A program made the position numbers and the translations under genes. Of a DNA stretch of 64,000 nucleotides, positions 2,291 to 21,050 are shown piece by piece. The notes under the pieces are model-generated. The model was given only the letters and a program-made list of their open reading frames with translations, did no database searches and was not told where the DNA came from. Numbering within the stretch: position 1 is the stretch's first letter; the number at the start of each line of letters is the position of its first letter. The stretch lies in the sequence record MK773491.1; one strand, written 5' to 3'.

Positions 2291-2490
2291 TTGACACGTT
2301 GGCAGTACTTTGCTATTATATACACATAGCAAGAACAATGCTCAAGCCCACAGGGTGCGGAGGTGTATTCGTTAAAAGCTAAATGCGAATGATTATCATT
2401 TCGCTCATATGATACATTTCCGCACCCTCTAGGGTCTCCGCTTTCTCGCGTCTATGTAGTAATTATACGGTAATGCGGTTTATGCGTCAA
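2291..2490. ncRNA. Convergent promoter pair enclosing two inverted RCCC-N-GGGTGC motifs and a central Fur-like palindrome
   Basis: + TTGACA(2291)-17-TATTAT; - TTGACG(2490)-17-TATAAT; motifs 2346-2358 and 2422-2435; AATGATTATCATT 2388-2400. Confidence 0.55.
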
Positions 2491-2640
2491 GTACTTTTTT
2501 AAAGAAAATCGAAAATAATTTAGTACTATATGTATATAAGGAAGGAAAAAGAATTTTCAAAAAGTACTTGCATTCTAATTTCACCTATTGCATAATAGCT
2601 ACATCGAAACGAGATACACAAACACATTAAGGAAAACGAT

Positions 2641-2874
2641 ATGATTCGCATTGTTCGCATTAATTACTCTACCGGTGAAGCTGATAAAGTAGCGGTTATT
2701 GTATCAGAAAAGAATGATGATCATCTACACAATACGCTGATGCGTTTTGTTAGTGCGGTTGACCGTTGGGCTAGTATTGAGTACTTAGAAACGTTTAAAG
2801 TCCCTGCCGTCCAGCTTAACGGGCATGATATTAAAGCAATTTGGAATGCTGACGAAATGATCGCGAACATGTAA
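2641..2874 (+). CDS. Hypothetical early protein
   Basis: Own promoter, AAGGA RBS. Confidence 0.85.
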   Translation: MIRIVRINYSTGEADKVAVIVSEKNDDHLHNTLMRFVSAVDRWASIEYLETFKVPAVQLNGHDIKAIWNADEMIANM

Positions 2875-2965
2875 TTATTTCAAGTACTATCAAAATTTAC
2901 TTGACTTACTTTGATAGTACTTTATAATACTTACATACAAACGAAGTACTATTAAGGAAAGCATT

Positions 2966-3097
2966 ATGATCACTATCGAGAAAATCCGTTTAGCAGTAGA
3001 AGAACTGATCGCGGCTGGCTGGATTGTCGCAGAAAGTGAAGAAGAAATTAACATTGTAGTAAATGGTATGTATTCAGTTATGACAAACGTGGAGTAA
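2966..3097 (+). CDS. Small hypothetical protein (43 aa, MITIEKIRLAVEEL)
   Basis: Promoter cassette and AAGGAA RBS; below ORF-track cutoff. Confidence 0.75.
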   Translation: MITIEKIRLAVEELIAAGWIVAESEEEINIVVNGMYSVMTNVE

Positions 3098-3179
3098 GTT
3101 AGTATTAAAAGTACTTGCATTTACTTAGCGAGTACTTTATAATACTTACATACAAACGAAACACTATTAAGGAAATATC

Positions 3180-3797
3180 ATGGAAAACATCATCGACGTT
3201 ATCAAGTCTGTTTCTTATGCTGATCTGAATGAAGAACAAAAAGAAAAAGCTATTGAGATCATGCGAGAGTTAGAAAATCAAGAAATGACTCCGTTTTGGT
3301 CTGTAGATATTACTGATCAATGGAAAGAAACTTTAGACACTGAATACGGCATTACTGATGCAGTGATTTATTGGTCTGGTTTTTGTTCACAAGGTGACGG
3401 TGCATCGATTAGTACTGAATACTATATTGATATTGAGAAGTTTTTACGTAAATGTAAAGCGTGGTCAAAATTCCGTGTACTGCACAAAATTATTGACCGT
3501 GAAGAAATTCATGCTAAGATTGAACGTAGCTCAAGCCGTTACAATCATGAAAACACTGTAAGCGGTAGCGTAGAGCTTGATTATAACATTGATTGGACGG
3601 CGAAGCAGGAAAGCGAAGCTGAACGCTTAGAAGAATTTTTGACCGAAACTATTCGCGAACTTTCTTGTAAGCTGTATAAAGAACTTGATAATGAGAATGA
3701 TTATCAAAACAGCGATGATGCTCTTTGGTCTACCATTGAAGCAAATGAATATGATTTTGCTGTAAACTCAAACGGCGACGTTTTGCGTATCGCCTAA
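3180..3797 (+). CDS. Acidic phage protein with WSGFCSQGDGAS motif
   Basis: Promoter cassette, RBS; motif recalled from phage/plasmid hypothetical proteins. Confidence 0.85.
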   Translation: MENIIDVIKSVSYADLNEEQKEKAIEIMRELENQEMTPFWSVDITDQWKETLDTEYGITDAVIYWSGFCSQGDGASISTEYYIDIEKFLRKCKAWSKFRVLHKIIDREEIHAKIERSSSRYNHENTVSGSVELDYNIDWTAKQESEAERLEEFLTETIRELSCKLYKELDNENDYQNSDDALWSTIEANEYDFAVNSNGDVLRIA

Positions 3798-3902
3798 AGT
3801 ACTGACATACTGTAAAACGCTCTATAACGCATTGTAGGGCGTTTTAAGGAATAGCAGTATCATTTATCATCTTAATTAATTAAACGGCGTAGACGGCGAT
3901 TT

Positions 3903-4073
3903 ATGAGCAAACAAGATATATTGAAAGGGGATGTTTTATACTGGTTAGATCCTGATGATGGGATCTGTTCTGGATGGGTAACAGTATTAGACGTTAATAC
4001 TACAGTACTGGTAAAAGGTGCAACGGCAGAATTTGAAGTGCTACCCGAAGAACTTTATTCGCATGAAGTTTAA
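3903..4073 (+). CDS. Small hypothetical protein (56 aa)
   Basis: MSKQDILKGDVLYWLDPDDG...; ends at the next promoter cassette. Confidence 0.7.
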   Translation: MSKQDILKGDVLYWLDPDDGICSGWVTVLDVNTTVLVKGATAEFEVLPEELYSHEV

Positions 4074-4157
4074 AAAGTACTTGCAAAGTAAATCTAAAAG
4101 CGTATAATGATTTGCATAGGGGGAAACATCTTCCCCCCACTATTAAGAGAAACGATT

Positions 4158-4598
4158 ATGACTATCTACTATCTGACTTATAAAACCGCCGACAATGTAA
4201 CTGATGCTAATGTGACCGCAAACACGGTACAGGAAGCAATGGAAGTACTGAAAGCGGAACTACCTGATATTCAGATCGTTTGTGTAGTTGATACCGAAAC
4301 GAATCTTAAAACTATTATTGACCACTATGATTATTTCCGTGGGCGTAAGTTACAGGACTGGTATCATATCGAAATAGAAACACGTGAACTACCAGAAGAA
4401 CAACAGCACTTTGAGCAGGGTACTAGCATTTGGGTTACTACCGATAAACGCATATATTTCTGTTCACGCATACACGTTAACAAGCGTGTTAAAATTGGGG
4501 CAGATTCATATAGTGGACTGTTTACAAATAGTAACCTACTAAATGACAAGTACATAAAAGTTTATGAGCGTTTTGGAACTGATATTTACGCTTCATAA
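4158..4598 (+). CDS. Hypothetical early protein
   Basis: Start moved to ATG 4158 after the leader hairpin and RBS. Confidence 0.8.
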   Translation: MTIYYLTYKTADNVTDANVTANTVQEAMEVLKAELPDIQIVCVVDTETNLKTIIDHYDYFRGRKLQDWYHIEIETRELPEEQQHFEQGTSIWVTTDKRIYFCSRIHVNKRVKIGADSYSGLFTNSNLLNDKYIKVYERFGTDIYAS

Positions 4599-4602
4599 TA
4601 TC

Positions 4603-4729
4603 ACAAAGGGGAAGCAATTGCTTCCCTGTTTATTTGTACAGTACTATAATCTATAGATACAATACCGCACCCCGTGGGCTAATGTGTTTTCATGGGTATT
4701 ATTATGCCAGTACTACAAACATTTGTCAA
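4603..4729 (-). ncRNA. Candidate ~95-nt sRNA: TTGACA-17-CATAAT promoter, GCCCACGGGGTGC motif, intrinsic terminator
   Basis: Promoter 4729-4701, motif 4667-4679, bidirectional hairpin 4607-4627; near-duplicate at 13171-13297. Confidence 0.6.
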
Positions 4730-5127
4730 TCATTATTTTCAATTAATTTAAACGCACTGTAACACTGTATAAGGCGTTTTGTTATTAAGGTAAGCAAACG
4801 TATTGAGTACTATCTAAAAGGCCGTTGTGGGCTTGCTGGTGGCGTTGTGTTGTAGTATTGAAATATAAGGAAAATATAAAAAAGGCTGTCAATGATTAAA
4901 AAAGTACTTGACGGATTGATTTAGTACTGTCATAATGTATCACATAGAGCGGCGGGATGGATAAACATTCCTAAGTAGACAGCCAGTAAGTCATACGAAA
5001 GACTGGTGCCGAACTGAAAGAAAGATTGAAAAGAGTTTTAAAAAGTACTTGACAAGCTGGTGGGAAATTGAGATAATGACCCCGTAGACAGCAAACAACC
5101 TAATTAAACTTTAAGAGGAAATATACA

Positions 5128-5715
5128 ATGACTACTACTACTGAAAATGCACGTGTTACCCTGAAATCTGCACTGGAAGCTGGCGACGTTAAAACCCTTG
5201 CTGTTATCCTTGCGAAAGTTGGTCATGATAAAGACGGCGTATCTAAATTGGGCTTGACTTTCTCACTGGCGGTTAAGGAAGCGAAGGAAGTACTTAAAGA
5301 GCAAGCCAAAGCAGCAGAAGAAGCTGCACGTCAGGCAGCAGAACGCCGCGAAGCTAAAAAGGCTGCACGTCAAGCCGAAGAAGAAAAGCGTCAGGCTGAG
5401 ATCAAGGCAGAAAAAGAAAATATGCTCAAGTTCCTCATGGATACGGTTAACGGTATGGGCTTAGACCTTGAGGCGGCAGAAGCGGCAGCAGAAGCGGCAA
5501 TTGTTAAAAAGTACGGCGATGTTAACAAAGTACCTAAGTATACTTTTAACCGTGTAGCGGTGATTGTAGACGGTAAAGAATACAACATGCCAACTTCTGG
5601 GAACATGGTAGAAGTACTTAAAAATGCACTTGAAGCAAGCGGTAAATCGCGTAAAGAGTTTATCATCGAACACGCGAAAGACAAGGCAGAAGCGGAAGCG
5701 GCATTCGCTGAATAA
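5128..5715 (+). CDS. H-NS-like protein (coiled coil plus H-NS-like C-terminal domain)
   Basis: PKYTF...G..VEVLKNALEASGKSRKEFII resembles H-NS PAKYSY...[23 protein letters not shown]; Ala/Glu/Lys helical linker. Confidence 0.5.
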   Translation: MTTTTENARVTLKSALEAGDVKTLAVILAKVGHDKDGVSKLGLTFSLAVKEAKEVLKEQAKAAEEAARQAAERREAKKAARQAEEEKRQAEIKAEKENMLKFLMDTVNGMGLDLEAAEAAAEAAIVKKYGDVNKVPKYTFNRVAVIVDGKEYNMPTSGNMVEVLKNALEASGKSRKEFIIEHAKDKAEAEAAFAE

Positions 5716-5732
5716 TAACAGTACTAAACTAT

Positions 5733-5759
5733 AGGCGGCCTAAGTGGTCGCCTTTTTTT
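5733..5759 (+). terminator. Intrinsic terminator
   Basis: AGGCGGCC-TAAGT-GGTCGCC-T7. Confidence 0.85.
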
Positions 5760-5773
5760 AATTGGGGGATTAT

Positions 5774-6034
5774 ATGGCTGTAGGATTCGCGAAAGACGGG
5801 GCAGAACAAGACGAGATTTTAGCGGTCATAAACGCCGCTGTAAGCCACGCAAGGAATCAGATAGGGGATAGTACTATTACAAGTAGAACGCACTGCCTAG
5901 ACTGTTCTAGGACTATTCCTGAGCGTAGACGGGAAGTAGTAAAGGGTGTTAAGTACTGCGTAGAGTGTCAGGCTGATCATGATAGTATATTTAAAAGAGA
6001 TCCGCGTAATTGTTGGCACAGATCTATGAGATAG
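5774..6034 (+). CDS. TraR/DksA C4-type zinc finger protein (YbiI-like)
   Basis: MAVGFAKDGAEQDEI...CLDC..IPERRR...GVKYCVECQ; GGGGGA RBS before 5774. Confidence 0.9.
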   Translation: MAVGFAKDGAEQDEILAVINAAVSHARNQIGDSTITSRTHCLDCSRTIPERRREVVKGVKYCVECQADHDSIFKRDPRNCWHRSMR

Positions 6035-6115
6035 TACTTGACATACTTTCTGATTAAAGTATAATGATTTGCATAGAGGGAAACATCTTCCTTCACTAAT
6101 TAAGGAAATAGAATC

Positions 6116-6388
6116 ATGCGTACACCAATGACCCGCGAAGAAATACACACAGTACTGACAACTAACATTCAGGACTGGAAGAAATACGCAGATATTAACG
6201 AAGCTCAAGACTTGAACAATGAGCTAGATGGTGAAGATCTGGACGTAATTTGTTCCCCTGAGTTTTATGATGATATTCATTCCGATGATGATGTTTGGAA
6301 TGTACTGGAAAAGCATTTCCTCGATACTGATTTAAGTATCTACTCGCGTGATACTTTTATTTTAATTCACAACATTTATAACAAATAA
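6116..6388 (+). CDS. Hypothetical early protein
   Basis: Promoter/hairpin cassette, RBS. Confidence 0.85.
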   Translation: MRTPMTREEIHTVLTTNIQDWKKYADINEAQDLNNELDGEDLDVICSPEFYDDIHSDDDVWNVLEKHFLDTDLSIYSRDTFILIHNIYNK

Positions 6389-6467
6389 TTGTTGACTTAC
6401 TTATATAGTACTGTATAATGGTTTGCATAGGGGGAAACATCTTCCCCCATCAATTAAGGAAAAGAAA

Positions 6468-6677
6468 ATGACTCGATACACTGTAGAAGTACGTACTACT
6501 AAAAACATTGCTACTGATGTGATTCGTTATTATAAGATGGTTTGTGGTGTTGCTCGCCGTATTAGTAAAGCGGATTATGACAAGCTGGATCGCGAAGCTG
6601 ATGGTATGGATTGTTTTTATACAGTAAACACAAAAACGCATACAAAGCAATTTAAAACATTGTCTTATTACATGTAA
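6468..6677 (+). CDS. Hypothetical early protein
   Basis: Start moved to ATG 6468 after AAGGA RBS. Confidence 0.85.
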   Translation: MTRYTVEVRTTKNIATDVIRYYKMVCGVARRISKADYDKLDREADGMDCFYTVNTKTHTKQFKTLSYYM

Positions 6678-6760
6678 AAAGTTTTACTCCAGTACTTGAC
6701 AATAGATGCGAGTACTGGCATAATAACTTTATTGAAACGAAATACTATTAAGGAAATATC

Positions 6761-7150
6761 ATGGCTAATCTCATTGTTCGATTGTATGAAGATTGTTTCT
6801 ACTTTGAGTATTGTGGGAAACCTATATCCGTTAAAGAGATGATCGCATCGGGCTATATGTTATCTAAGCATGATCACACTGGATTCATGGCTGAAATGAT
6901 TGCGGCTAGTTATAAGTTTGGTGAAGAATGGGAAGCACAATATTTTCCGGCTGTCAATGCAATGATTAAGCGGTTGGCAGAACACACTGAGTTTATGGAA
7001 TTTTGGACTGTTTTAAAAATGGTTGACGTGAATCAGAATGGGGAAACGTGTCAGCCATACGCACATTTTGACGCTGGGGAAGATATTAGCACAATTTGGA
7101 AATGGTTGGAAGATAAATTTACAACAATTAAAATTGCAGATTACTTGTAA
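6761..7150 (+). CDS. Hypothetical early protein
   Basis: Promoter, RBS. Confidence 0.85.
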   Translation: MANLIVRLYEDCFYFEYCGKPISVKEMIASGYMLSKHDHTGFMAEMIAASYKFGEEWEAQYFPAVNAMIKRLAEHTEFMEFWTVLKMVDVNQNGETCQPYAHFDAGEDISTIWKWLEDKFTTIKIADYL

Positions 7151-7234
7151 AAGTACTTGCATTACTATCTGAAAAGCGTATAATGGTTTGCATAGGGGGA
7201 AACATCTTCCCCCACTAATTAAGAGAAGAATATC

Positions 7235-7615
7235 ATGGCTAATCAAATCACTCCAGCACAGACCTTCAATAAATTCAGTACTGAAATCGTATTGAAAGAG
7301 TATGTGCCAGATTATGGTTGGACTGATGCATGTGTATGCACTGATGTAGCAGATGCAAAGCAACGCATTAAAGATTATCGTGCGGAGGGTTTACAGGTTA
7401 AAACTGCCCGTCGCCGTGTACTTAACAAAGATGCTTTCTTATGTCAAGCTCTTTTAAACTTCTGCCGTGACTACTATCGCCGTACTGGTGGATTATGGCC
7501 TAATGAGGTTGAAGTACTGAAATCTAACGGTAAAGTAAAATTTACCTTGACTTTAAAAGAAATTGAGGAAGTACTTGGTGATGATTGTTTTTTAGTAACT
7601 TCACAGCCAGCATAA
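7235..7615 (+). CDS. Hypothetical early protein
   Basis: Promoter/hairpin cassette, RBS. Confidence 0.85.
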   Translation: MANQITPAQTFNKFSTEIVLKEYVPDYGWTDACVCTDVADAKQRIKDYRAEGLQVKTARRRVLNKDAFLCQALLNFCRDYYRRTGGLWPNEVEVLKSNGKVKFTLTLKEIEEVLGDDCFLVTSQPA

Positions 7616-7684
7616 AAAAGTACTTGACACATAACGGGGATATGATACAATATCCCCATATTGAAAAGTAATGGAAGTACTGAA

Positions 7685-7876
7685 ATGAATTATCAAAAGG
7701 TTAGCAAGCGAGTAGTTGAACTCTCTAAGAAAGCACGTAAAGAGTATACCTTAGAACGTTCAATTAACAACTATCATTTAAAGCAAGGTGATAAGTTTAT
7801 TGTTATTGACGAACCTTTGGAAATCGTGTATATTGTAGTTAATGCGATGATTCGTGATAAAACGAGGATTAAGTAA
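7685..7876 (+). CDS. Hypothetical early protein
   Basis: Promoter TTGACA 7624; ATG start. Confidence 0.7.
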   Translation: MNYQKVSKRVVELSKKARKEYTLERSINNYHLKQGDKFIVIDEPLEIVYIVVNAMIRDKTRIK

Positions 7877-8131
7877 ATGCGTACATTAGACCAACTTATT
7901 GACCCTAATACGTCAGCACGTCGATCAATGGTTACTATCGGCGGTAATGGTAAACAACACTGGAGTGGTTACATTTGCTTTATTGTTGGTGGAAAAATGT
8001 ATGAGCGGGTAGTATATCACAAAGAGATTAATTATATACTATTCCGTAAAGAAGTCATAGCAGTCGATCCTACCGCCCTAAAACCGATTGCAGGGGCATG
8101 GAACAAAGAATCGCTGTACCTTACAGCTTAA
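7877..8131 (+). CDS. Hypothetical protein
   Basis: GAGGA RBS; abuts the upstream stop. Confidence 0.8.
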   Translation: MRTLDQLIDPNTSARRSMVTIGGNGKQHWSGYICFIVGGKMYERVVYHKEINYILFRKEVIAVDPTALKPIAGAWNKESLYLTA

Positions 8132-8180
8132 CCAATAAAAGGCCGCTACGTGCGGCCTATCGCGTTCTAGAGGGTATATT

Positions 8181-8363
8181 ATGAATACTGTACAAGTACT
8201 AGATGAGATTGAAAAAATTGTTGACAGTACTAACAAACGTGATATACTGTTATCAAGAAATGAGGCTAACCAGTACGAAAAGAATTGCGTACAATCGGTA
8301 AAAGGGGGCATCTTTGAATCGTTACACACAGCCATACTTCAAGGGAATCACAACTGTTCCTGA
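8181..8363 (+). CDS. Hypothetical protein
   Basis: GAGGG RBS. Confidence 0.65.
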   Translation: MNTVQVLDEIEKIVDSTNKRDILLSRNEANQYEKNCVQSVKGGIFESLHTAILQGNHNCS

Positions 8364-8567
8364 GCGTAAAAAGAAACTACGCACAGCACCGAAACGAAAG
8401 CGTAAAGTACTTAAACTTAAACCAACGTATGGTTGGGGATTGTCGTGGGATGAAATCAATCACGGCCTATCATGGAATCAATTATATGTTATTGGCTCAA
8501 GTGTTGGTCGCTTTCATTTTAGTACTATATCACGACACGAAACACGTGTAAACCCATATAAAAGTAC

Positions 8568-8752
8568 TTGACATGCATCCGGCTTAGTGAGATAATACTT
8601 ACAAGCCGGAGAAATGGCGTGACCCAGCGGGTGCGAAGAAGTAATAAGTACTTGAGAATGATAATCATTTACGATACTAGACAGATTTATGCACCCGATG
8701 GGTTAGATTGTTTTCATGTGTATATAATATCAAAGTACTATTATAGTGTCAA
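8568..8752. ncRNA. Second convergent promoter pair with inverted ACCC-N3-GGGTGC motifs and a central Fur-like box
   Basis: + TTGACA(8568)-17-GATAAT; - TTGACA(8752)-17-TATTAT; motifs 8622-8634 and 8691-8704; TGAGAATGATAATCATTT 8653-8670. Confidence 0.6.
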
Positions 8753-8844
8753 GCATTTTTATTTGATAATTATTTTAAAAAAGTCTTGCATTACTTTCTG
8801 AATAACGTATAATACTTACATCAACCACTAAGAGGAAAGAAACA

Positions 8845-13923: not shown

Positions 13924-13980
13924 CAGTACTAAGGGAGTGTTATATAATACTCCCATGTTAAGCAAACGAGGAATTACAAA

Positions 13981-14205: not shown

Positions 14206-14351
14206 AAAAAGAATACATCATCCGAGTACAAATGAAAGGCGGTGCACAACGTACTTTTCGTGAATGGGGTTGGTCTGCTGGTATGGCCTTTGAACAGCTT
14301 AAAAAAGATAATCCCGATGTGCAATACAAAATAGAATCAAAAGAGGCGTAA
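14202..14351 (+). CDS. Small hypothetical protein (49 aa)
   Basis: ATGA coupling; stop is the TAA of the next cassette. Confidence 0.75.
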   Translation: MKKEYIIRVQMKGGAQRTFREWGWSAGMAFEQLKKDNPDVQYKIESKEA

Positions 14352-14428
14352 TTATTATCAAAAGTACTTTACAAGTATAGTAGAGTACTTTATAATACTT
14401 ACATCAATTAAGCAAAGAGAGAAACATC

Positions 14429-14665
14429 ATGAAACGTAAACTTACTATTTCCTACGAATGGTCTAAGACTGATGGTAGCGACGTAGAAGCACATCATGTG
14501 CCTTACTTAGAAGAATCAGCCTTTGAACGTATTCGCGAAATGATTGGTGATGGTTATGTAAAAGGCCAACTATCCGATAACCTTCACACACAGGAAGATC
14601 CAGACGACCACGAAGGAACTGATTATCATGGCTGGTGGACGTTAATAACTGAAGGTGAAGATTAA
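14429..14665 (+). CDS. Acidic hypothetical protein
   Basis: Cassette promoter, RBS. Confidence 0.85.
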   Translation: MKRKLTISYEWSKTDGSDVEAHHVPYLEESAFERIREMIGDGYVKGQLSDNLHTQEDPDDHEGTDYHGWWTLITEGED

Positions 14666-14744
14666 TTATTATCAAAAGTACTCTTGACAATACAAAGAGA
14701 GTACTTTATAATACTTACATCAACTAAGCAAAGAGGATAGGAAA

Positions 14745-14882
14745 ATGAAAGAATCTCAATACGAAGCAGTACTGGCACAGACTGGTGAAGATCTGACTAC
14801 TGAGCAGTACGCTAAAATTGAAGAGATGCTTTTAGCTGGTAAATCTGTTAAAGACACTGTGAAAGCAGTTCGTAAGATGTAA
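14745..14882 (+). CDS. Small hypothetical protein (45 aa)
   Basis: Cassette promoter, GAGGATAGGA RBS. Confidence 0.8.
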   Translation: MKESQYEAVLAQTGEDLTTEQYAKIEEMLLAGKSVKDTVKAVRKM

Positions 14883-14956
14883 AATAATTAGTCAGTACTC
14901 TTGACACTATCATAGAGTACTGCTATAATTACTTTACTTAATCAGGAGAACATACT

Positions 14957-15274
14957 ATGGCTTTACATTCAGCAATGCGAAAAACTGTTAACATCTATGC
15001 AGATAAAAACATTATGGATTGTACTCTTGGGCATACTGATAATCAATATGCAATTATGGTAAAAAACCCGTTCACTGGTGAAGATTGCATTTACAGTGGA
15101 CAGTACTTAGAAAGTAATTTATTACCTGCCACAAAACGCAGTGAAATGAAAGGGTATATTACCCGGCACAGAGCAGAACGTGACATTGCAACAATCTTTT
15201 TACCCGGTCAAAATGCTCGTGTGGTAACGATGGAAGAAGCAGAGATTTTTCTTGGCAGCCGCTTTAAAGTGTAG
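14957..15274 (+). CDS. Hypothetical early protein
   Basis: Promoter, AGGAG RBS. Confidence 0.85.
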   Translation: MALHSAMRKTVNIYADKNIMDCTLGHTDNQYAIMVKNPFTGEDCIYSGQYLESNLLPATKRSEMKGYITRHRAERDIATIFLPGQNARVVTMEEAEIFLGSRFKV

Positions 15275-15485
15275 TATAATACTTTTATCAAATCAAGTGG
15301 AGTACTAAAAAGATGATTACACCTATTGCACCAATCTACAAAACAGTGTATAATACTTATAGTACTCCAAGGCAACAACAGATTATAGAGGAACTGAAAG
15401 AACAGAAAAAAGAAGTAAAAAGTACTGGTAACCGAATCGATATTAAAGTATAATACTTACATCAACCACAAAGAGGAATACAAAA

Positions 15486-15824
15486 ATGGCTATTACTTCT
15501 ATCTTCTGCAACACCCGAAACGAAGCACGTCAGGCTAAAATCGATTTCAACGGTAAAATTGTTGACAATGGTTCTGATGCACCCAAGGGACAGCGTTGGG
15601 AAGTACAATACGAAGTAGCCCCCGTATCTGATGCCATCGCGGAACTTGCAGCAATCATGCAAGCGGAAGTACAAGACATGGCACTAGAAGAAGTGTCACC
15701 ACGTGAGATTATGGGTCTTCCACGTCCTGTAAGCAAGCATAAAAAAACCCGTGCTGTGATCATGAAAGATCGCAAAGGTAATCCAGTTACTGTACAGGTT
15801 CGCCGTCGCCGCATTACTGCCTAA
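15486..15824 (+). CDS. Hypothetical protein with Arg-rich C-terminus
   Basis: GAGGA RBS; downstream GCAA hairpin. Confidence 0.85.
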   Translation: MAITSIFCNTRNEARQAKIDFNGKIVDNGSDAPKGQRWEVQYEVAPVSDAIAELAAIMQAEVQDMALEEVSPREIMGLPRPVSKHKKTRAVIMKDRKGNPVTVQVRRRRITA

Positions 15825-15864
15825 CCGAAAGGGGGAGCAATCCCCCAAACTTTTAAGAGGATTT

Positions 15865-16116
15865 ATGAAGAAGCAAGTACAATTAATTAATGGTAATTTC
15901 ATGCGATTGCATTATAAACCACAAAAGAAAATCATTGAGAAAGCTACAAAGGTAGCAAATGATTTTGTTAGTGGGACAGTTCGCCCTCGTAAACTATCTA
16001 ACGGATTGTTTCAAGTACTGGATATTAGCAGAACAGAACGTATCGTAATTGATAAGGAAAAGCAAATACATTTAATGAGTCACGAAAAGTACAATGATTT
16101 TGTGAATCAGCGTTGA
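15865..16116 (+). CDS. RelE/ParE-like small protein (C-terminal LMSHEKYN)
   Basis: RPRKL...L.I...RI...LMSHEKYN pattern recalled from phage ParE-like toxin family. Confidence 0.45.
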   Translation: MKKQVQLINGNFMRLHYKPQKKIIEKATKVANDFVSGTVRPRKLSNGLFQVLDISRTERIVIDKEKQIHLMSHEKYNDFVNQR

Positions 16117-16170
16117 CAGACTACCACCAACATAGTATAATACTTTCATCAACTAAACGAGGGTTCTAAA

Positions 16171-16560
16171 ATGAAAAAGATTGTTTCTGCTATCGCCATC
16201 GCTGTTATGTTTTCTTCAACTCCAGTTATGGCATACACTGTTAATCTGAATGAATTGACAGATTGGGGAAACCAAATGCGTGATCGCTTTGCAGTACCAG
16301 ACCATATCCAGCAGCAGCAAAAACAAGGTAGTGAAATGTTATGCCGTGGGGTAATGACCAACGAGCAAACCGGACAACAATTCCGCGAACAATTCCGTAC
16401 TAGTGGTGAACGTTCGGTATCGGGTAATGATATCATCTATCATGATGAAGATGAAACCGGAAGTACTACCTTGCAAATTAATGCAAAAACTGGTAAAGGC
16501 TTTATTACGATGATGGACACTGAAAAAGTTATCGTAACTGGTAATGTAGTTTGCAAATAA
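16171..16560 (+). CDS. Exported protein with signal peptide
   Basis: MKKIVSAIAIAVMFSSTPVMA; two Cys. Confidence 0.8.
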   Translation: MKKIVSAIAIAVMFSSTPVMAYTVNLNELTDWGNQMRDRFAVPDHIQQQQKQGSEMLCRGVMTNEQTGQQFREQFRTSGERSVSGNDIIYHDEDETGSTTLQINAKTGKGFITMMDTEKVIVTGNVVCK

Positions 16561-16569
16561 AGTACTAAA

Positions 16570-16660
16570 AAAGGGGTTGACTTCGGTTGGCCCTTTTGCT
16601 ATTATATATCCCATAGAAACAAGCTAACCCACAGGGTGCATAAATATATCTATAATTTAC
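16570..16660 (+). promoter_or_regulatory. Terminator/promoter fusion plus TAACCCACAGGGTGC motif in a leader
   Basis: TTGACT 16577, TATTAT 16600, motif 16625-16639. Confidence 0.6.
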
Positions 16661-16676
16661 CGAAAGGAGAGACATT

Positions 16677-17210
16677 ATGCCCGGACATTTCCGTTCTAAA
16701 TCAGGTGCTATTATCGCTGGTCACAGTGACAAGTGGAGTGATGAAAACCGTAGACGTAACAGTTTCAACGCTGGACAGGGTTCACGTGGTTCTCGTAACC
16801 AAGGCACTGGAGCAGCAGGACAAGCACAAACTAAAACAGATACCATTGTAGATACTTCTCGGATGAAACCAGAAGAAAAACTAAAGTACTTCCAATCTTT
16901 GGGATTACTTGGTCATCAAGAGAAAGGTTCTAAAGAGCCACCAAAAGCAGCACCACAAAAACCAATGCCTACTGATAGTAAATCACTTATTAGTACTTTA
17001 CAAGATCAATGGAAAGATGCATTTAAAGGCGATGTACGCCATTCTAAGCGACTTATTGCAGAACTTAAGGACGTTGCCCCAGCTAAGATCAAAAAAGCTC
17101 TACAGGCTGCTTACAGGGCCACACAAGAGGTTACCGCACGTGAAGCCGACCCCCTAGCAATAGTTGAATATATCAGTGATGCTATTGTTCCATTTACATA
17201 TGAAGATTAA
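16677..17210 (+). CDS. Basic protein with disordered N-terminus
   Basis: AGGAGA RBS; G/R/S/Q-rich N-terminal half. Confidence 0.8.
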   Translation: MPGHFRSKSGAIIAGHSDKWSDENRRRNSFNAGQGSRGSRNQGTGAAGQAQTKTDTIVDTSRMKPEEKLKYFQSLGLLGHQEKGSKEPPKAAPQKPMPTDSKSLISTLQDQWKDAFKGDVRHSKRLIAELKDVAPAKIKKALQAAYRATQEVTAREADPLAIVEYISDAIVPFTYED

Positions 17211-17276
17211 AATAAAAGGTTGACATGAGTCAGCCTTTTTTGCTATCATAGAACTACACAAATAGGAGATAGTAAC

Positions 17277-17540
17277 ATGAAATACTTACTAATCATCGCC
17301 ACATTATTCAGTACTCAAGCAATGGCAACAGATATGGTTTGTAGTGCTGATGGTTTCCAAACTGTATTCAAGGTAGATGGCAACACGCTTATTGACACCA
17401 ACGAACACGTAGTAGCTGAAGAAATCAGTACTGGTAAGTTTATGGCACAAGATCAGTTCGGTGAAGTAGTTTATACTATTCACGGAAATAAGATTGTAAT
17501 GCAATTCAGTGGTGTTATCAAAGAGTACAATTGCAAATGA
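17277..17540 (+). CDS. Exported protein with signal peptide
   Basis: MKYLLIIATLFSTQAMA; Cys near each terminus of the mature chain. Confidence 0.8.
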   Translation: MKYLLIIATLFSTQAMATDMVCSADGFQTVFKVDGNTLIDTNEHVVAEEISTGKFMAQDQFGEVVYTIHGNKIVMQFSGVIKEYNCK

Positions 17541-17731
17541 TTGTACAAGTAACACTAAAAGGATTGAAGCCCGGAGAAGATGACTACGAAACACATGTAG
17601 CCACTATTTCCGGGTTGACAATGGATGAAATTGATGGTAATATACTGTCATACATCTACGAATGGCGTAATGCAAACGGGTATTACAAAATGAAATATAT
17701 TCATAAAGAGGTAATCTCATGCGATAACTAA
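17537..17731 (+). CDS. Hypothetical protein
   Basis: ATGA overlap. Confidence 0.7.
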   Translation: MIVQVTLKGLKPGEDDYETHVATISGLTMDEIDGNILSYIYEWRNANGYYKMKYIHKEVISCDN

Positions 17732-17747
17732 CACAGGAGATTACACA

Positions 17748-17963
17748 ATGCCAACTCATTCACTAGTACTTAATGGGATTCGATTCAAAATGACTGAGGG
17801 TGCATTGCAAAGTACTAACACGCAATTAGTACTTGATAAACTCACAAAAGAACAATGTGATGGTATCCTTCGCGAAGCAAATCGCATTAAGTCAACTGTA
17901 TCAAATCACCCGGTTAAGCGTCAATTACTTCAGGGGATCATTATGGGATGTTTGCGTAAATGA
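17748..17963 (+). CDS. Hypothetical protein
   Basis: AGGAG RBS. Confidence 0.8.
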   Translation: MPTHSLVLNGIRFKMTEGALQSTNTQLVLDKLTKEQCDGILREANRIKSTVSNHPVKRQLLQGIIMGCLRK

Positions 17964-18112
17964 TTTATCAACAAATTATTGCAGTACTGAAAACACTTGA
18001 CTACGGAAATGCAATCCGTTATGCTAGTGCTAACGCCTTTGAACTCGCTCAAATGTATGAGCAAGGTAGTACCATTGATGAGCTGGTGGAGGTTTGTCTC
18101 AGTCATAAATAA
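17960..18112 (+). CDS. Small hypothetical protein (50 aa, MIYQQIIAVLKTLDY)
   Basis: ATGA coupling; fills the gap. Confidence 0.7.
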   Translation: MIYQQIIAVLKTLDYGNAIRYASANAFELAQMYEQGSTIDELVEVCLSHK

Positions 18113-18138
18113 TCTTGTAATTATTACAGGAGATCATT

Positions 18139-18411
18139 ATGACAGACTTAAACGCAATCAAGCAATGGAGTACTATCCCATTAAAAGAACTACCGCAACT
18201 ACTAAAGCAACAAGGTTTTCAATTTGTGCCACGTTTTAGTACTGAAGATCATCGCATCTTCGTATCCCAAGATGGACAATATTTGATTAATATTATCCGT
18301 AATACTGGAAAAGTATACAGTACTAAAAATCAGAAATCACCTTTGCATATTTTTGGTATTCGTAATGGTGAGATTCCAAAAGGTGCAGATAAAGCATTCA
18401 GAACTGAATAA
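18139..18411 (+). CDS. Hypothetical protein
   Basis: AGGAG RBS. Confidence 0.8.
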   Translation: MTDLNAIKQWSTIPLKELPQLLKQQGFQFVPRFSTEDHRIFVSQDGQYLINIIRNTGKVYSTKNQKSPLHIFGIRNGEIPKGADKAFRTE

Positions 18412-18479
18412 TAAAAAAGGGTTGACTTAGGTCGGCCCTTTTTGTTATTATATACTTATTGAAGCGAAGGAGATAGAAC

Positions 18480-19070
18480 ATGTACGTCACTAAAGCAGCA
18501 AAGAAACACTTAAAAGAACTTGACAAGTTACCAACTAATAAACAAATGTTAAAGTACTGTCGAGAAAATTTAACACGTTTGGGTAAGGGTTCAAGTCGTG
18601 AAGTTTTTGCATTATCTGATACATTAGTAATCAAGATCGCTTTAGGTGGTGTAGGTGTAAAACAGAATGAAAATGAGATTCGTATCTGGAATCTAGTTAG
18701 TTATTCATTTACTGGATTTAAGAGATCATTCGCTAAAGTACTGGTAAATTTATGCCACTGGAAAGACTTCTATATCGTCATGGAGCGTTTAAATACACAA
18801 ACTGTATCTCGGTCAATCTTTAATACAAGTACCGTTAGAGCGTGGCGTATGAATCGCAACGCAATGCATCCAATTGCTAAACGTATATTCAAAGATGTAC
18901 AAGCCACTGATGATAATGCTTATACTAATAACATAGCAGATATAACTCCACGAAATATGGGAACATCAAAAACAGGCGTTGTCAAGATGTTGGATTATGG
19001 TTTTAGTACTCCTATATGGAATGGACTTGCTAATGGTACATTAAAGAATAGAGAATTACTTATAAAATAG
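18480..19070 (+). CDS. Protein kinase-fold enzyme (Ser/Thr kinase-like)
   Basis: LGKGSSREVF Gly loop, VIKIA Lys, NENE, IVMERL hinge, DITPRN catalytic loop, LDYG (DFG-like). Confidence 0.8.
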   Translation: MYVTKAAKKHLKELDKLPTNKQMLKYCRENLTRLGKGSSREVFALSDTLVIKIALGGVGVKQNENEIRIWNLVSYSFTGFKRSFAKVLVNLCHWKDFYIVMERLNTQTVSRSIFNTSTVRAWRMNRNAMHPIAKRIFKDVQATDDNAYTNNIADITPRNMGTSKTGVVKMLDYGFSTPIWNGLANGTLKNRELLIK

Positions 19071-19132
19071 TTCTTGACTCCGTTACGCTGGTGGGATATA
19101 CTTATCCCATCAACAACAGAGAGGAATATAAA

Positions 19133-19378
19133 ATGTTTAAAGTACGTAAATGGTCTGACTCTAACGCCCGCCCTTATGATGTTGTTTATGTGGATGATAT
19201 TCGAAACAATATCCACTATCAACCCGGAGTGGAGTTTAGTACTATTGAAGGTGCTTATCATCATAAAGAAGTACTAATCAAAAGCACTGATGAAGATAGT
19301 ATAGAATTTATCCGTAAACATTGGCCCACTGATGGTGCTGCTGATGAGGATAATTCAGAAGAACCAAAAAAAGATTAA
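19133..19378 (+). CDS. Hypothetical early protein
   Basis: Start moved to ATG 19133 after GAGGA. Confidence 0.8.
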   Translation: MFKVRKWSDSNARPYDVVYVDDIRNNIHYQPGVEFSTIEGAYHHKEVLIKSTDEDSIEFIRKHWPTDGAADEDNSEEPKKD

Positions 19379-19384
19379 TATAAA

Positions 19385-19485
19385 GAGGTTGACTTCGGTC
19401 AGCCTTTTTTGTATTATATACACCAAGAAAACAGCTAACCCACAGGGTGCATAAATCCGTCTTTCAAATGTATATTTTTTCATCG
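19385..19485 (+). ncRNA. Terminator/promoter fusion plus TAACCCACAGGGTGC motif, no ORF
   Basis: TTGACT 19389, TATTAT 19412, motif 19436-19450. Confidence 0.5.
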
Positions 19486-19610
19486 AAGTACTAAAACGAA
19501 TACGAAACAAATAAATTTCAAAAAGTACTTGACCACTATTACAGATTGTCGTATAATGTTTTACATCGAGAGGGGAAATGGTTCTACTCTCTAACTTAAG
19601 GAATTAAATC

Positions 19611-20132
19611 ATGATTACTACTCCAGTACGCGATATGTTTAACGTTAACCCACACACTGGTATTGCTTATGGATACATCAACGCGAACAACGTAAACAGT
19701 GAAGTACTGAATGAAATTTTCTGCAATGGCATTGATGTAGCTCGACTTGAAGCAGATATTGACTTCGCCAAACGTTATGATTTCGTAGTACCTGATCAAA
19801 AGGAATCAGAAGATTATACTGCTTATCTTGAGCGTGTACAATCCGATATGCTTGACTTCCTTAACAATCTGGGCGATGATGTGATGGAAAAAGTGGAAGC
19901 ACATGATCGCGAATATGAAGAGTTTACAGGTCATGTACATGCCGCCACTGTAGATAAGACTACAGTACTTTATAACACTGATAACAATACTATCTGTGTT
20001 ATGGATGGCATCAATGTTGGTTTCTTCTATGCTTGCTCTCCATGCTGCCCGAATGCTGGTGATCTTGATAGTGCTGGTGGAAGTGTAGAAACTTACGATG
20101 TACCTGCAAGCTGGCGTGAACTGGATTACTAA
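19611..20132 (+). CDS. Conserved phage protein (NPHTGIAYGYI; CSPCCPNAGDLD)
   Basis: Hairpin cassette, RBS. Confidence 0.85.
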   Translation: MITTPVRDMFNVNPHTGIAYGYINANNVNSEVLNEIFCNGIDVARLEADIDFAKRYDFVVPDQKESEDYTAYLERVQSDMLDFLNNLGDDVMEKVEAHDREYEEFTGHVHAATVDKTTVLYNTDNNTICVMDGINVGFFYACSPCCPNAGDLDSAGGSVETYDVPASWRELDY

Positions 20133-20191
20133 TTGACAACAACAAAGGGATAGCATACACTATCCCTAACTTAAGAAAAGAGGAAATCAAA

Positions 20192-20371
20192 ATGGTTCAC
20201 GTTGATCTTGAAGTACTGAAAAAAGTATGGTACGACATTGGCTATAAAAATATTAGCTGGACGGATAACCAGTACATCGAGCTTAAGGCACTGGATAACT
20301 GGCAGCGTAATGAAGTACTGAAAGCACACAAAAAAGGTGTAGATGATCGCTTTAACTTTCCTGTACTTTAA
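20192..20371 (+). CDS. Small hypothetical protein (59 aa)
   Basis: Promoter, GAGGA RBS. Confidence 0.8.
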   Translation: MVHVDLEVLKKVWYDIGYKNISWTDNQYIELKALDNWQRNEVLKAHKKGVDDRFNFPVL

Positions 20372-20463
20372 TAGAAAAAAGTACTTGCATAGTATTCTGA
20401 TTACTGTATAATGTTTTTCATAGAGAGGGGAATGGTTCTTCTCTCTAAATTAAGGAAAACATT

Positions 20464-20646
20464 ATGACTAACAAATATCGTACTCAGTTCTTCATGGTTG
20501 ATGGTGCTCGATTAACTGCTGCTGACGTACACGAGTACTACGGAGTGAGCATTGATGATCTTCTGGTGATGCATGAAGATGAAACACAATTCTTCCATGC
20601 TCATGGGTACGAGGTTAAAGTAACACGCTGCCCAGCATACAATTAA
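20464..20646 (+). CDS. Small hypothetical protein
   Basis: Hairpin cassette, RBS. Confidence 0.8.
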   Translation: MTNKYRTQFFMVDGARLTAADVHEYYGVSIDDLLVMHEDETQFFHAHGYEVKVTRCPAYN

Positions 20647-20691
20647 TCATTTGGGGAGAGAGGTAATACTCTCCCATATTAAGGAACGTCC

Positions 20692-20958
20692 ATGAAACTG
20701 ATTAACACACTAACGCGATTGTTTGGCACTGATAATGTTGACGATTGGAACGATGTTAACGATGAAGATAATGTGATTGATTACATCGTTATCTACCACA
20801 ACAATGATGGTGATAATGAGTGTGAGCCTGATTACTTCCTACGCCACTACGACAACGGATCATACCAGCTTAATGATCTCAGTGGCAACGTAATTCACAC
20901 TGGTAATGATCTGGCAGTACTAAAGAAAGTACTAAAGAATTTACCAAAAAGTAATTGA
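20692..20958 (+). CDS. Acidic hypothetical protein
   Basis: AAGGA RBS. Confidence 0.8.
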   Translation: MKLINTLTRLFGTDNVDDWNDVNDEDNVIDYIVIYHNNDGDNECEPDYFLRHYDNGSYQLNDLSGNVIHTGNDLAVLKKVLKNLPKSN

Positions 20959-21050
20959 CTATAATCTGCTGGTGGAGTATTATATATCCATTGGCAGATA
21001 AGCCACTAACCCACGGGGTGCATAGATCCATCTATTGGATTTAAGTACTA
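20955..21050 (+). ncRNA. Promoter (Chi in spacer) plus TAACCCACGGGGTGC motif, no ORF
   Basis: TTGACT 20955, TATTAT 20978, motif 21007-21021; leader nearly identical to 11010-11043. Confidence 0.5.

What the first reader, a model, noticed from the sequence alone, without database searches (positions are those of the whole stretch)
2346..21021. Family of ten promoter-driven non-coding units sharing an RCCC-N3-GGGTGC hairpin (candidate phage sRNA or antitermination system)
Seen: the motif occurs at 2346(+), 2422(-, N4 variant), 4667(-), 8622(+), 8691(-), 11029(+), 13235(-), 16625(+), 19436(+) and 21007(+). Every copy lies about 20-35 nt downstream of a near-consensus sigma70 promoter and in its orientation; six of these promoters have -10 TATTAT rather than TATAAT. 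Leaders are shared (ATGAAAACAAGCT-AACCC or CATTGGCAGATAAGC.ACT-AACCC), and a loose consensus follows (GGGTGC-N6-RTCT). Nine copies have no adjacent ORF. Two (4603-4729, 13171-13297) form complete promoter-motif-terminator units of about 95 nt pointing antisense at upstream genes. The first stem position varies A/G opposite an invariant T, which suits RNA pairing (A-U or G.U) better than a DNA palindrome. Inference: either a multi-copy sRNA that sponges a host RNA-binding or defence protein, or a boxB/nut-like nascent-RNA signal. In the second case the minus-strand copies could switch on antisense shut-off of early genes. I do not recognise it as a described family.
Basis: partly seen in the sequence, partly recalled or inferred. 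Interest (0 to 1): 0.87.

Follow-up and report, generated by a model that had tools for sequence, protein, structure and literature searches.

The report
Repeated structured early RNA, jumbo phage
Ten copies of a previously undescribed small folded RNA, each made from its own strong promoter, fill the first-injected terminal repeat of a giant Salmonella phage and its relatives; the RNA is real and conserved, but what it does is still unknown.

Summary
The window is Salmonella phage 7t3, a RaK2/PBECO4-like jumbo myovirus. All ten motif copies exist (four coordinates are 2 nt off). Each lies 20-26 nt after the -10 box of a near-consensus sigma70 promoter, in that promoter's orientation.

The hairpin is only the middle of a roughly 50-nt module that starts near +3 of the transcript:
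- P1, a hairpin whose four pairs covary heavily (30 different stems in 60 copies).
- P2, the invariant RCCC-loop-GGGU hairpin.
- A conserved tail, GC-N6-(G)YRYYYAU. It is complementary to GGGUG, so it offers an alternative helix (P2') of about the same stability as P2.

A covariance model finds 9-12 copies per phage in six genera. It finds none elsewhere in 94 kb of 7t3, none in Pseudomonas phage PA5oct, none in chance pattern matches, and the motif pattern finds none in 185,579 bacterial and archaeal genomes. Rfam has no match.

The copies lie only inside the ~20-kb direct terminal repeat (window 1345-21983 by homology with fENko-Kae01).

They come in three contexts:
- Stand-alone ~92-nt promoter-module-terminator genes, antisense to unrelated genes.
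- Convergent pairs.
- Leaders followed by a second promoter.

The function is unproven. My best guess (0.35) is a multi-copy, trans-acting early small RNA that titrates a protein. The main rival (0.25) is a put/nut-like nascent-RNA element acting on RNA polymerase.

The parts
1345..21983 (.). Inferred direct terminal repeat (DTR) of phage 7t3. This is the first-injected, host-RNAP-transcribed early region, and it holds every copy of the module.
   Evidence: fENko-Kae01 bases 1-600 align to window 1345-1945 (99%), and bases 19300-20300 align to 21547-22547 (100%). Its PhageTerm DTR is 1-19736. GC skew flips near window 2000.
2291..2372 (+). Unit 1: promoter TTGACA-17-TATTAT, P1 AGCA/TGCT (loop AGAACAA), P2 at 2346-2356, tail to 2372. 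It is the convergent partner of unit 2.
   Evidence: (42.3 bits).
2408..2490 (-). Unit 2: promoter TTGACG-17-TATAAT, P1 CGC/GCG (loop GAGAAA), P2 ACCC-TAGA-GGGT at 2435-2424. It fires towards the genome's left end, about 1.1 kb away.
   Evidence: (29.2 bits).
2388..2400 (.). Palindrome AATGATTATCATT midway between units 1 and 2. It resembles the core of the E. coli Fur box (resemblance from my own knowledge).
   Evidence: 4 strand-matches at 2 sites; expected 0.25. A variant, AATGAGAATCATT, is kept in the RaK2, BF and Yen9 pairs.
4600..4729 (-). Unit 3: a stand-alone gene for an RNA of about 92 nt. It has promoter TTGACA-17-CATAAT, P1 ATG/CAT, P2 at 4679-4669, tail, AGTACTGTACA, and a terminator at 4626-4609. 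It is antisense to the end of ORF 4158-4598.
   Evidence: 34.7 bits; fold z = -3.3.
8568..8648 (+). Unit 4: promoter TTGACA-17-GATAAT, P1 GCCG/TGGC (loop GAGAAA), P2 at 8622-8632. It is the convergent partner of unit 5.
   Evidence: 41.8 bits. In the fENko ortholog a T-to-C change turns a G.U pair of P1 into G-C.
8657..8669 (.). Second palindrome, AATGATAATCATT, between units 4 and 5.
8677..8752 (-). Unit 5: promoter TTGACA-17-TATTAT, a leader without a P1 stem (CATGAAAACAATCTA), P2 at 8703-8693.
   Evidence: (36.3 bits).
10968..11057 (+). Unit 6: a terminator hairpin that contains the -35 box (PeSL-like), -10 TATTAT, P1 TGGC/GCTA (loop AGATAA), P2 at 11031-11041. A second promoter follows about 35 nt later and drives ORF 11141-11308.
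   Evidence: 52.3 bits.
13168..13297 (-). Unit 7: a stand-alone gene for an RNA of about 92 nt. It has promoter TTGACA-17-TATAAT (12/12), P2 at 13247-13237, tail GGAATTGTATCTAT, AGTACTGTACA, and a terminator at 13195-13176. It is antisense to the end of ORF 12859-13167.
   Evidence: blastn finds it in RaK2, K64-1 and others; 41.1 bits.
16570..16653 (+). Unit 8: a PeSL-like terminator/promoter, a leader without a P1 stem, P2 at 16627-16637. It is the only copy directly followed by a ribosome-binding site and ORF (16677-17210, a virion protein).
   Evidence: (43.2 bits). In fENko-Kae01 the sequence is identical up to GGGTG and unrelated after it, which marks a recombination junction.
19382..19464 (+). 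Unit 9: a PeSL-like terminator/promoter, a leader without a P1 stem, P2 at 19438-19448. A second promoter at 19529-19557 drives ORF 19611-20132.
   Evidence: 32 bits.
20955..21035 (+). Unit 10: promoter TTGACT-17-TATTAT, P1 TGGC/GCCA (loop AGATAA), P2 at 21009-21019, tail ATAGATCCATCTAT. It is the last copy, about 950 bp before the inferred right boundary of the DTR.
   Evidence: (56 bits).

Best explanation
Shown by the analysis: the units are genes for one family of small structured RNAs. Host sigma70 RNA polymerase would start about 3 nt before P1. The transcript folds into P1, whose stem sequence is free but whose loop is purine-rich (GNGAAA, AGAUAA or AGAACAA). It also folds into P2 (RCCC/GGGU), or alternatively P2' (GGGUGC/GYRYYY with loop RGARNU). 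There are 9-12 copies per terminal repeat. Since the repeat is present twice in the virion DNA, that is about 20 promoters per genome, all in the DNA that enters first.

Inferred mechanism: the RNA itself is the product and it acts in trans. Within minutes of infection the cell fills with many copies of the same module. Some are free ~92-nt sRNAs. Others form the 5' part of longer transcripts. The module binds and titrates an RNA-binding protein. That protein could be a host factor (an RNase, an RNA chaperone or a defence sensor) or a phage or virion protein that needs an RNA partner. The invariant CCC/GGGUGC core and the conserved loop and tail bases would be the binding determinants. The near-isoenergetic P2/P2' pair would let binding select one conformer. 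A base-pairing role (sibling sRNAs with the tail or the CCC as seed) is a sub-variant I rate lower.
For: RNA-level structure:
- All four P1 pairs covary, with 18-27 double changes each and 97.5% of cells paired. P1 has at least 4 bp in 43 of 60 copies, against a shuffle mean of 16 and maximum of 26.
- G.U pairs make the fold strand-specific.
- P2 loops of 3 or 4 nt are both tolerated.

The RNA as product:
- Stand-alone promoter-module-terminator genes of constant length are kept in all six genera.
- The genes they face are unrelated.
- About a third of copies point against the local genes.
- Most co-oriented copies are followed by a separate promoter for the gene.
- One principle explains all three contexts: make as much module RNA as possible wherever an intergenic slot exists.

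Dose and timing:
- Promoters match 10-12 of 12 positions.
- Copies are confined to the DTR.
- In the related phage PA5oct the DTR is the early region and carries two very abundant ncRNAs (PMC7318152).

Binding determinants: the core is invariant even when the search pattern leaves it free, and the tail and loop positions are conserved.
Against: - There are no transcript data for any phage that carries the module.
- No partner was identified. Pfam and PHROGs on about 20 DTR proteins gave only a DksA/TraR zinc finger and families of unknown function.
- The module always sits at a fixed distance from the promoter, at the very 5' end. A cis-acting nascent-RNA element predicts this; a sponge does not need it.
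- GGGUGC-N5-U|G fits the consensus elemental pause signal (the consensus itself is from my own knowledge).
- Most copies have no terminator of their own.
- About 7 of 60 copies lack a P1 stem.
- No similar sequence was found in host genomes, so there is no sign of mimicry of a host RNA.
Confidence: 0.35

Rival explanations
1. A cis-acting nascent-RNA element that works like HK022 put or a lambda nut site. P1 and P2 fold as they leave RNA polymerase. The enzyme pauses at about +38/+39 (GGGUGC-N5-U|G). The RNA, alone or with a phage protein, then stays on the polymerase and changes pausing or termination at the many terminators of the repeat. P2' forms once the tail is made and resets the element.
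For: - The module starts about +3 and lies at a fixed distance from the -10 box in 51 of 60 copies.
- It consists of two adjacent hairpins right after strong early promoters. putL likewise starts at +3 of PL, has two stem-loops, and uses a nearby pause (PMC9378689).
- G is at -10/-11, U at -1 (57/60) and G at +1 (36/60) relative to the proposed pause.
- Terminators alternate with units along the DTR.
- The mutually exclusive P2/P2' helices have similar energy, -4.1 against -3.2 kcal/mol.
Against: - About a third of the copies are antisense, and the stand-alone ones stop at a strong terminator about 40 nt later, so there is nothing to antiterminate into except unrelated genes in antisense.
- Most co-oriented copies are followed by a second promoter lacking the module, and that promoter serves the gene.
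- There is no boxA, no N- or Q-like protein, and no sequence or Rfam similarity to known elements.
- At about 50 nt the module is shorter than put (about 70 nt).
Confidence: 0.25
2. A 5'-end stability or processing signal. The 5'-terminal P1 hairpin, with P2, protects transcripts from 5'-end-dependent decay (RppH/RNase E). Alternatively it marks them for, or shields them from, a phage-induced ribonuclease.
For: P1 begins 2-4 nt from the predicted 5' end. Its stem sequence is free but its pairing is kept. The tail is an A/U-rich single strand next to hairpins.
Against: A generic protective hairpin would not need an invariant CCC/GGGUGC core or a conserved 16-nt tail. Only about a quarter to a third of the strong early promoters carry the module. 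The stand-alone units protect nothing. Some copies have no P1 stem.
Confidence: 0.1
3. A DNA-level element: either an operator for a dimeric repressor at +20 to +32 that shuts these promoters off, or a recombination site that shuffles gene cassettes as proposed for PeSLs.
For: ACCC-N3-GGGT is a palindrome whose stem never covaries. An exact recombination junction lies at the end of GGGTG between 7t3 and fENko-Kae01. Several of the promoters are PeSL-like terminator/promoter composites (PMC4122927).
Against: P1 covariation, and tail variation restricted to pair-preserving transitions, cannot be selected in duplex DNA. The half-site spacing varies between 3 and 4 bp. The G.T 'mismatch' in 21 of 60 copies fits RNA and not a DNA palindrome. 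The recombination junction is what any conserved 80-bp repeat would give.
Confidence: 0.05

Closest known systems
HK022 put RNA (putL/putR), a protein-independent antiterminator RNA
   Same: Both lie immediately downstream of a strong early sigma70 promoter. Both start about +3, form two adjacent stem-loops, and have a nearby pause-type signal. Both sit in an early region studded with terminators (PMC9378689).
   Different: There is no sequence similarity. The module is about 50 nt against about 70 nt for put. It has 9-12 copies instead of 2. A third of copies are antisense or terminate after about 92 nt. It has an alternative helix (P2') that is not part of the put description. Binding to RNA polymerase is untested.
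Lambdoid nut sites (boxA + boxB with protein N)
   Same: A short hairpin with a purine-rich GA-containing loop (P1) lies near the start of early transcripts.
   Different: No boxA occurs in any of 60 units. The loop is 6-7 nt on a 4-bp stem, not a GNRA-like pentaloop on 5 bp. No N-like arginine-rich protein was recognised. The invariant second hairpin and the tail have no counterpart in nut.
PeSL (promoter-early stem-loop) cassettes of T4-type phages
   Same: These are composite terminator plus early sigma70 promoter elements, repeated between small ORFan genes in a plastic region and associated with recombination junctions (PMC4122927).
   Different: PeSLs are described as terminator, promoter and Shine-Dalgarno sequence, with no conserved transcribed RNA structure. 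Here the conserved part is a structured transcript. Only some of the unit promoters are of the terminator-embedded type, and one such promoter (18414-18443) has no module.
Multi-copy regulatory or decoy RNAs (CsrB/RsmZ-type protein sponges, sibling sRNAs such as Qrr, prophage anti-sRNAs, RNA anti-CRISPRs)
   Same: Many near-identical structured modules are made at high level from their own promoters, and some copies are stand-alone with an intrinsic terminator.
   Different: The modules are separate genes rather than repeats within one RNA. The GGA motif needed by CsrA is present in fewer than half of the copies. There is no match to any Rfam sRNA, ToxI or CRISPR-repeat family. No target or partner is known.

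Membership tests
Lambda-type nut site | A boxA sequence (CGCUCUUA / UGCUCUUUAACAA type) next to the hairpin | tested here: not met
   The regular expression [CT]GCTCTT[TA]A, and even GCTCTT, is absent from all 60 units up to about +140 and from the + strand of the window.
Lambda-type nut site | A boxB: 5-bp stem with a GNRA-like pentaloop bound by an arginine-rich N protein | tested here: inconclusive
   P1 is 3-5 bp with 6-7-nt purine-rich loops. No N-family hit appeared in Pfam or PHROGs for about 20 DTR proteins. Two basic proteins carry R-rich stretches, but neither looks N-like.
HK022 put RNA | Two stem-loops of about 70 nt made just after an early promoter | tested here: inconclusive
   Two stem-loops starting about +3 are present. 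However, the module is about 50 nt, unrelated in sequence, and has an alternative helix.
HK022 put RNA | Binds the RNAP beta' zinc-binding domain and suppresses termination in cis without protein factors | not testable with these tools
   This needs in vitro transcription and mutant RNA polymerase.
PeSL cassette | A terminator stem-loop fused to a sigma70-type early promoter, repeated in a plastic ORFan region | tested here: met
   Hairpins containing the -35 box lie at 10968-10997, 16570-16597, 19382-19409 and 18414-18443. Most Yen9 and BF unit promoters are of the same type. A junction lies at the repeat. This covers only the promoter part of some units, not the RNA module.
Any Rfam 15 family (riboswitches, ribozymes, sRNAs, ToxI, CRISPR direct repeats, leaders) | Covariance-model score at or near the family's gathering threshold | tested here: not met
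   There were no hits at gathering thresholds in 64 kb. With E up to 10 on 22 kb, and on two single units, only far-below-threshold chance hits appeared.
Hfq-type trans-acting sRNA | An intrinsic terminator with a U tail, plus a single-stranded conserved seed | tested here: inconclusive
   Terminators are present only in the stand-alone copies. A conserved single-stranded tail exists. No target could be searched for; blastn against E. coli genomes found nothing.
CsrA/RsmA sponge | GGA in the loop of each repeated hairpin | tested here: not met
   In the P2' loop, G is at position 4 in 37 of 60 copies and A at position 5 in 48 of 60, but GGA is present in fewer than half. A whole class has AUAAAU instead.

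The most novel reading that the evidence does not exclude
The module is a new class of phage RNA device. It is a bistable (P2/P2') RNA made from about 20 strong promoters in the first DNA to enter the cell. Either it reprograms host RNA polymerase without homology to put or nut, or it acts as an RNA decoy that disarms a host RNA-binding nuclease or immune sensor before any phage protein exists.
Probability: 0.25. Interest if true: 0.85.

Novelty: new variant of a known kind. Interest (0 to 1): 0.62.

Why it matters
RaK2/PBECO4-like jumbo phages are candidates for phage therapy, and more than 80% of their genes have no known function. Their 20-kb terminal repeat is the host-takeover region, and almost nothing is known about how it works.

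This is a conserved RNA family with strong covariation, present in about 20 promoter-driven copies per genome and absent from Rfam. It gives a concrete handle on that region that can be tested by mutation.

If the RNA acts on RNA polymerase, it would be a second, unrelated example of an RNA-only or RNA-centred elongation switch. If it is a decoy, it would add to the very short list of RNA-based phage counter-measures.

At the least, it corrects the annotation, since several small 'CDSs' are really promoters plus RNA. It also supplies a covariance model for annotating these phages.

Tried and rejected
- Three-way junction (5' AUAGA pairing with 3' UCUAU): present only in copies that happen to start CAUAGA, so not general.
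- Pseudoknot between the P1 or P2 loops and the tail: an all-against-all covariation scan of the model alignment found only the four P1 pairs.
- Small third hairpin within N6 plus tail: no covariation, because A at N6 position 4 is not compensated.
- Leaderless mini-ORF (AUG AAA ACA AGC UAA): an AUG is present in only 3-4 of the 10 window copies.
- Mimicry of a host RNA or a host origin: a 19-base pattern found one chance terminator in 185,579 genomes, and blastn against E. coli genomes found nothing.
- Homology with the abundant DTR ncRNAs of PA5oct: no model hit in its 40-kb DTR.
- Antisense or toxin-antitoxin-like pairing with a specific upstream gene: the upstream genes are unrelated.
- Search for compensated P2 variants with a pattern that leaves CCC/GGG free: only canonical copies and chance hits came back.
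- First viral-contig scan with 14 specified bases: mostly chance hits, not useful.
- RNAalifold on eight stand-alone units: the alignment was too poor, and only P2 was returned.
- Paralogue array after the DTR: not found.

Full report
**Identity of the window.** The window is 100% identical to Salmonella phage 7t3 (MK773491.1, record 62001-126000), a 349-kb myovirus of the RaK2/PBECO4/GAP32 group. It contains no tRNA genes and no Rfam family at gathering thresholds.

**The observation.** RCCCNNNGGGTGC occurs nine times where 0.01 is expected. An N4-loop variant occurs once. Allowing three mismatches adds only chance-level matches beyond 21.1 kb.

Each copy follows a sigma70 promoter matching 10-12 of 12 positions on the same strand, and the -10 box ends 20-26 nt before the motif. 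Six -10 boxes are TATTAT. Units 4603-4729(-) and 13171-13297(-) end in intrinsic terminators.

**The unit is larger than the hairpin.** Blastn with one 130-nt unit finds it in Klebsiella (RaK2, K64-1, Muenster), Escherichia (PBECO4 group), Cronobacter (GAP32), Serratia (BF), Erwinia and Yersinia (fHe-Yen9) jumbo phages. I collected 60 copies from six phages. Lined up on the motif, they show the following order:
- the -10 box, about 6 nt, then C-A-(U/A), where transcription should start;
- hairpin P1;
- a 3-nt linker, most often CUA;
- P2 = RCCC-loop-GGGU;
- GC;
- a purine-rich N6;
- GUAUCUAU.

**P1.** P1 has at least 4 bp in 43 of 60 copies, against a shuffle mean of 16 and a maximum of 26. 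It has 30 different stem sequences. Its loops fall into a few classes: GCGAAA (14), GAGAAA (12), AGAUAA (7) and AGAACAA (6). About seven copies, four of them in the window, keep the A-rich leader but have little or no stem.

**Covariance model.** I built the model from 25 copies of identical geometry. It recovers all ten window copies at E <= 3.7e-5 and nothing else in the 64 kb except one marginal hit. In all it gives 63 hits in 215 kb of the six phages, which is 9-12 per phage.

On the model alignment all four P1 pairs covary, with 18-27 double changes each and 97.5% of cells paired. The P2 stem is invariant (CCC/GGG). Its closing pair is A-U in 38 copies and G.U in 21. There is a single compensated CCU/AGG copy. 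One caveat: the seed alignment was chosen for P1 pairing and the model alignment leans towards the model. The variety of stems and the shuffle test do not depend on that choice.

The G.U pairs, and the tolerance of 3- or 4-nt P2 loops, point to a fold in the strand sense to the promoter. That means RNA.

**A second helix.** After GGGU the consensus is G C R G A R N U G U A U C U A U. Position 8 is U in 57 of 60 copies. Positions 10, 13 and, with four exceptions, 14 are always pyrimidines. Position 11 is always a purine. That pattern, YRYYY, is the complement of GGGUG.

The helix GGGUGC/GYRYYY (P2') is formed by 91% of cells in register, against 33-65% when slid. The inner five pairs are about 97% formed. 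All variation consists of pair-preserving transitions. There is no double-sided covariation, because the 5' strand is invariant, so P2' is supported but not proven.

P2 and P2' exclude each other and have similar energy: -4.1 +/- 0.5 against -3.2 +/- 3.1 kcal/mol, with P2 the more stable in 28 of 60 copies. RNAfold picks P2' in several whole units. No other pairing shows covariation. A search that left the CCC and GGG positions free found no compensated variants, so the core is constrained in sequence.

**Where the copies are.** In fENko-Kae01, which is 97% identical to the window, PhageTerm defined a direct terminal repeat at 1-19736. All ten model hits there lie at 980-18790, and none lies in 19737-48000. 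By alignment, the repeat corresponds to window 1345-21983.

There are no hits in window 21.1-64 kb or in the 30 kb before the window. In RaK2, Yen9, BF, GAP32 and PBECO4 the copies likewise span 15-19 kb at a genome end, and Muenster's repeat is 20,030 bp. I did not scan the rest of the 7t3 genome.

In the related phage PA5oct the terminal repeat is the early-transcribed region and carries two abundant ncRNAs (PMC7318152). Its repeat has no copy of this module, however.

**Specificity.**
- Among 100 loci brought in by a chance-prone pattern scan (893 kb), only jumbo-phage loci reach E <= 0.01.
- An 18-base pattern matches only genomes of about 350 kb in IMG/VR, plus one 109-kb contig.
- A 19-base pattern matches one unrelated terminator in 185,579 bacterial and archaeal genomes.
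- E. coli genomes give nothing.
- Rfam gives nothing, even for single units at E <= 10.
- The genome papers I read describe promoters and repeats but not this element.

**Contexts.**
- (a) Stand-alone genes. These consist of promoter, module, AGUACUG(U/A)A..., A-rich stretch and terminator, giving about 92 nt. They point against the end of the preceding gene. They are present in every genus (7t3 units 3 and 7; RaK2 20057+ and 27125+; PBECO4 11600+; GAP32 12885-; BF 9117-; Yen9 20001+). The genes they face are unrelated.
- (b) Convergent pairs 75-90 bp apart. The first pair lies about 1 kb from the genome's left end. In 7t3, RaK2, BF and Yen9 these pairs flank the palindrome AATGAnnATCATT.
- (c) Co-oriented copies. 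These often sit behind a terminator hairpin that contains their own -35 box. In most cases a second sigma70 promoter follows 40-70 nt later and serves the gene. Only unit 8 runs straight into an ORF.

Comparing 7t3 with fENko-Kae01, most units are identical. One P1 change converts G.U to G-C. Unit 8 is identical up to GGGTG and unrelated afterwards, which marks a recombination junction at the repeat.

**How it most likely works.** What is shown: this is a conserved structured RNA module at the 5' end of transcripts from strong early promoters, multi-copy and restricted to the terminal repeat. What is inferred follows.

The three contexts are most simply explained if the RNA itself is the product and copy number is what matters. 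I therefore favour a trans-acting early small RNA that binds and titrates a protein (0.35), with base-pairing as a lesser variant.

The main rival (0.25) is a put/nut-like nascent-RNA element. The fixed 5' position, the two hairpins, the P2/P2' switch, and the fit of GGGUGC-N5-U|G to the consensus pause signal all speak for it. That consensus (G-10, Y-1, G+1) is from my own knowledge of work by Larson and Vvedenskaya, and I did not test it. The antisense terminated copies and the second promoters speak against this rival.

A 5'-stability signal (0.10) does not explain the invariant core. A DNA operator or recombination site (0.05) does not explain the covariation. The remainder is unknown.

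No partner was found. The repeat's proteins are almost all of unknown function, apart from a DksA/TraR zinc finger.

**Comparison with known systems.**
- The promoter part of several units matches PeSL cassettes of T4-type phages (PMC4122927). PeSLs have no transcribed structure.
- The module works like put in position and form, but it is not a member: there is no similarity, the size differs, and RNAP binding is untested.
- It fails the nut test on boxA.
- It fails the CsrA-sponge test on GGA.

It is best described as an undescribed RNA family of a known general kind (phage early regulatory RNA), with an unusual organisation.

Noticed in passing
Whole window, densest in 1-22000. Also L124 1-600, L003, L126, L127 and L128.: The hexamer AGTACT occurs 254 times in 64 kb, 139 of them in the first 22 kb. 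The next commonest palindromic hexamer occurs 28 times there. AGTACT sits just upstream of -35 boxes (AAAAGTACTTGAC), inside promoter spacers (CAGTACTGnnATAAT), after the RNA module in stand-alone units, and in dense arrays within the first 600 bp of the genome end. It looks like a protein-binding or modification site used genome-wide in this phage group.
   Followed up: partly
Window 2388-2400 and 8657-8669.: The 13-bp palindrome AATGA(T/A)(T/A)ATCATT is identical to the core of the E. coli Fur-box consensus (resemblance from my own knowledge). It lies exactly between both convergent unit pairs (expected 0.25 matches). It is conserved as AATGAGAATCATT in the RaK2, BF and Yen9 pairs and is absent from the PBECO4 and GAP32 pairs. 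It could be a roadblock for a host or phage protein, or an origin-like site.
   Followed up: partly
Window 10968-10997, 16570-16597, 18414-18443 and 19382-19409.: These are intrinsic-terminator hairpins whose loop or stem contains the -35 box (TTGACT) of the next promoter, with the T-run leading into the -10 box. They are PeSL-like composite terminator/promoters. The one at 18414 has no RNA module and runs straight into the ribosome-binding site of ORF 18480.
   Followed up: partly
Window 2287-2382, 4634-4762, 8568-8801, 10958-11137, 13202-13312, 19355-19510 and 20955-21044.: The small CDSs annotated in GenBank over the units are probably spurious. 7t3_0165 'starts' at the TTG of a -35 box and spans two convergent promoters. 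Most of these CDSs have no counterpart in the fENko-Kae01 annotation.
   Followed up: partly
Window 16677-17210.: This is the only ORF directly behind a unit. It encodes a 177-aa protein with a basic, RG-rich N-terminus (RRRNSFNAGQGSRGSR). It is annotated as a virion or LC-MS/MS-detected protein in 7t3, BF and fENko-Kae01, and it hits the PHROG 'virion structural protein'. A packaged, possibly co-injected RNA-binding protein would be a candidate partner for the module, but this is pure speculation.
   Followed up: partly
Window 16612-16700 compared with L140 14074-14140.: 7t3 and fENko-Kae01 are identical through promoter, leader and P2 up to GGGTG, and unrelated after it. fENko carries an extra gene there. 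This is a recombination junction at the conserved repeat, consistent with cassette shuffling.
   Followed up: yes
Window 1345 (equivalent to fENko-Kae01 base 1).: The physical left end of the genome starts with the inverted repeat TATCTTCT-CTGTATA-AGAAGATA followed by AGTACT arrays. Unit 2 at the left end and unit 10 in the right-hand repeat copy both fire outwards towards a DNA end about 1 kb away.
   Followed up: no
Window 5774-6034.: A DksA/TraR-type C4 zinc-finger protein is encoded in the terminal repeat (Pfam PF01258, E 3e-8). It is likely a secondary-channel regulator of host RNA polymerase made very early.
   Followed up: no
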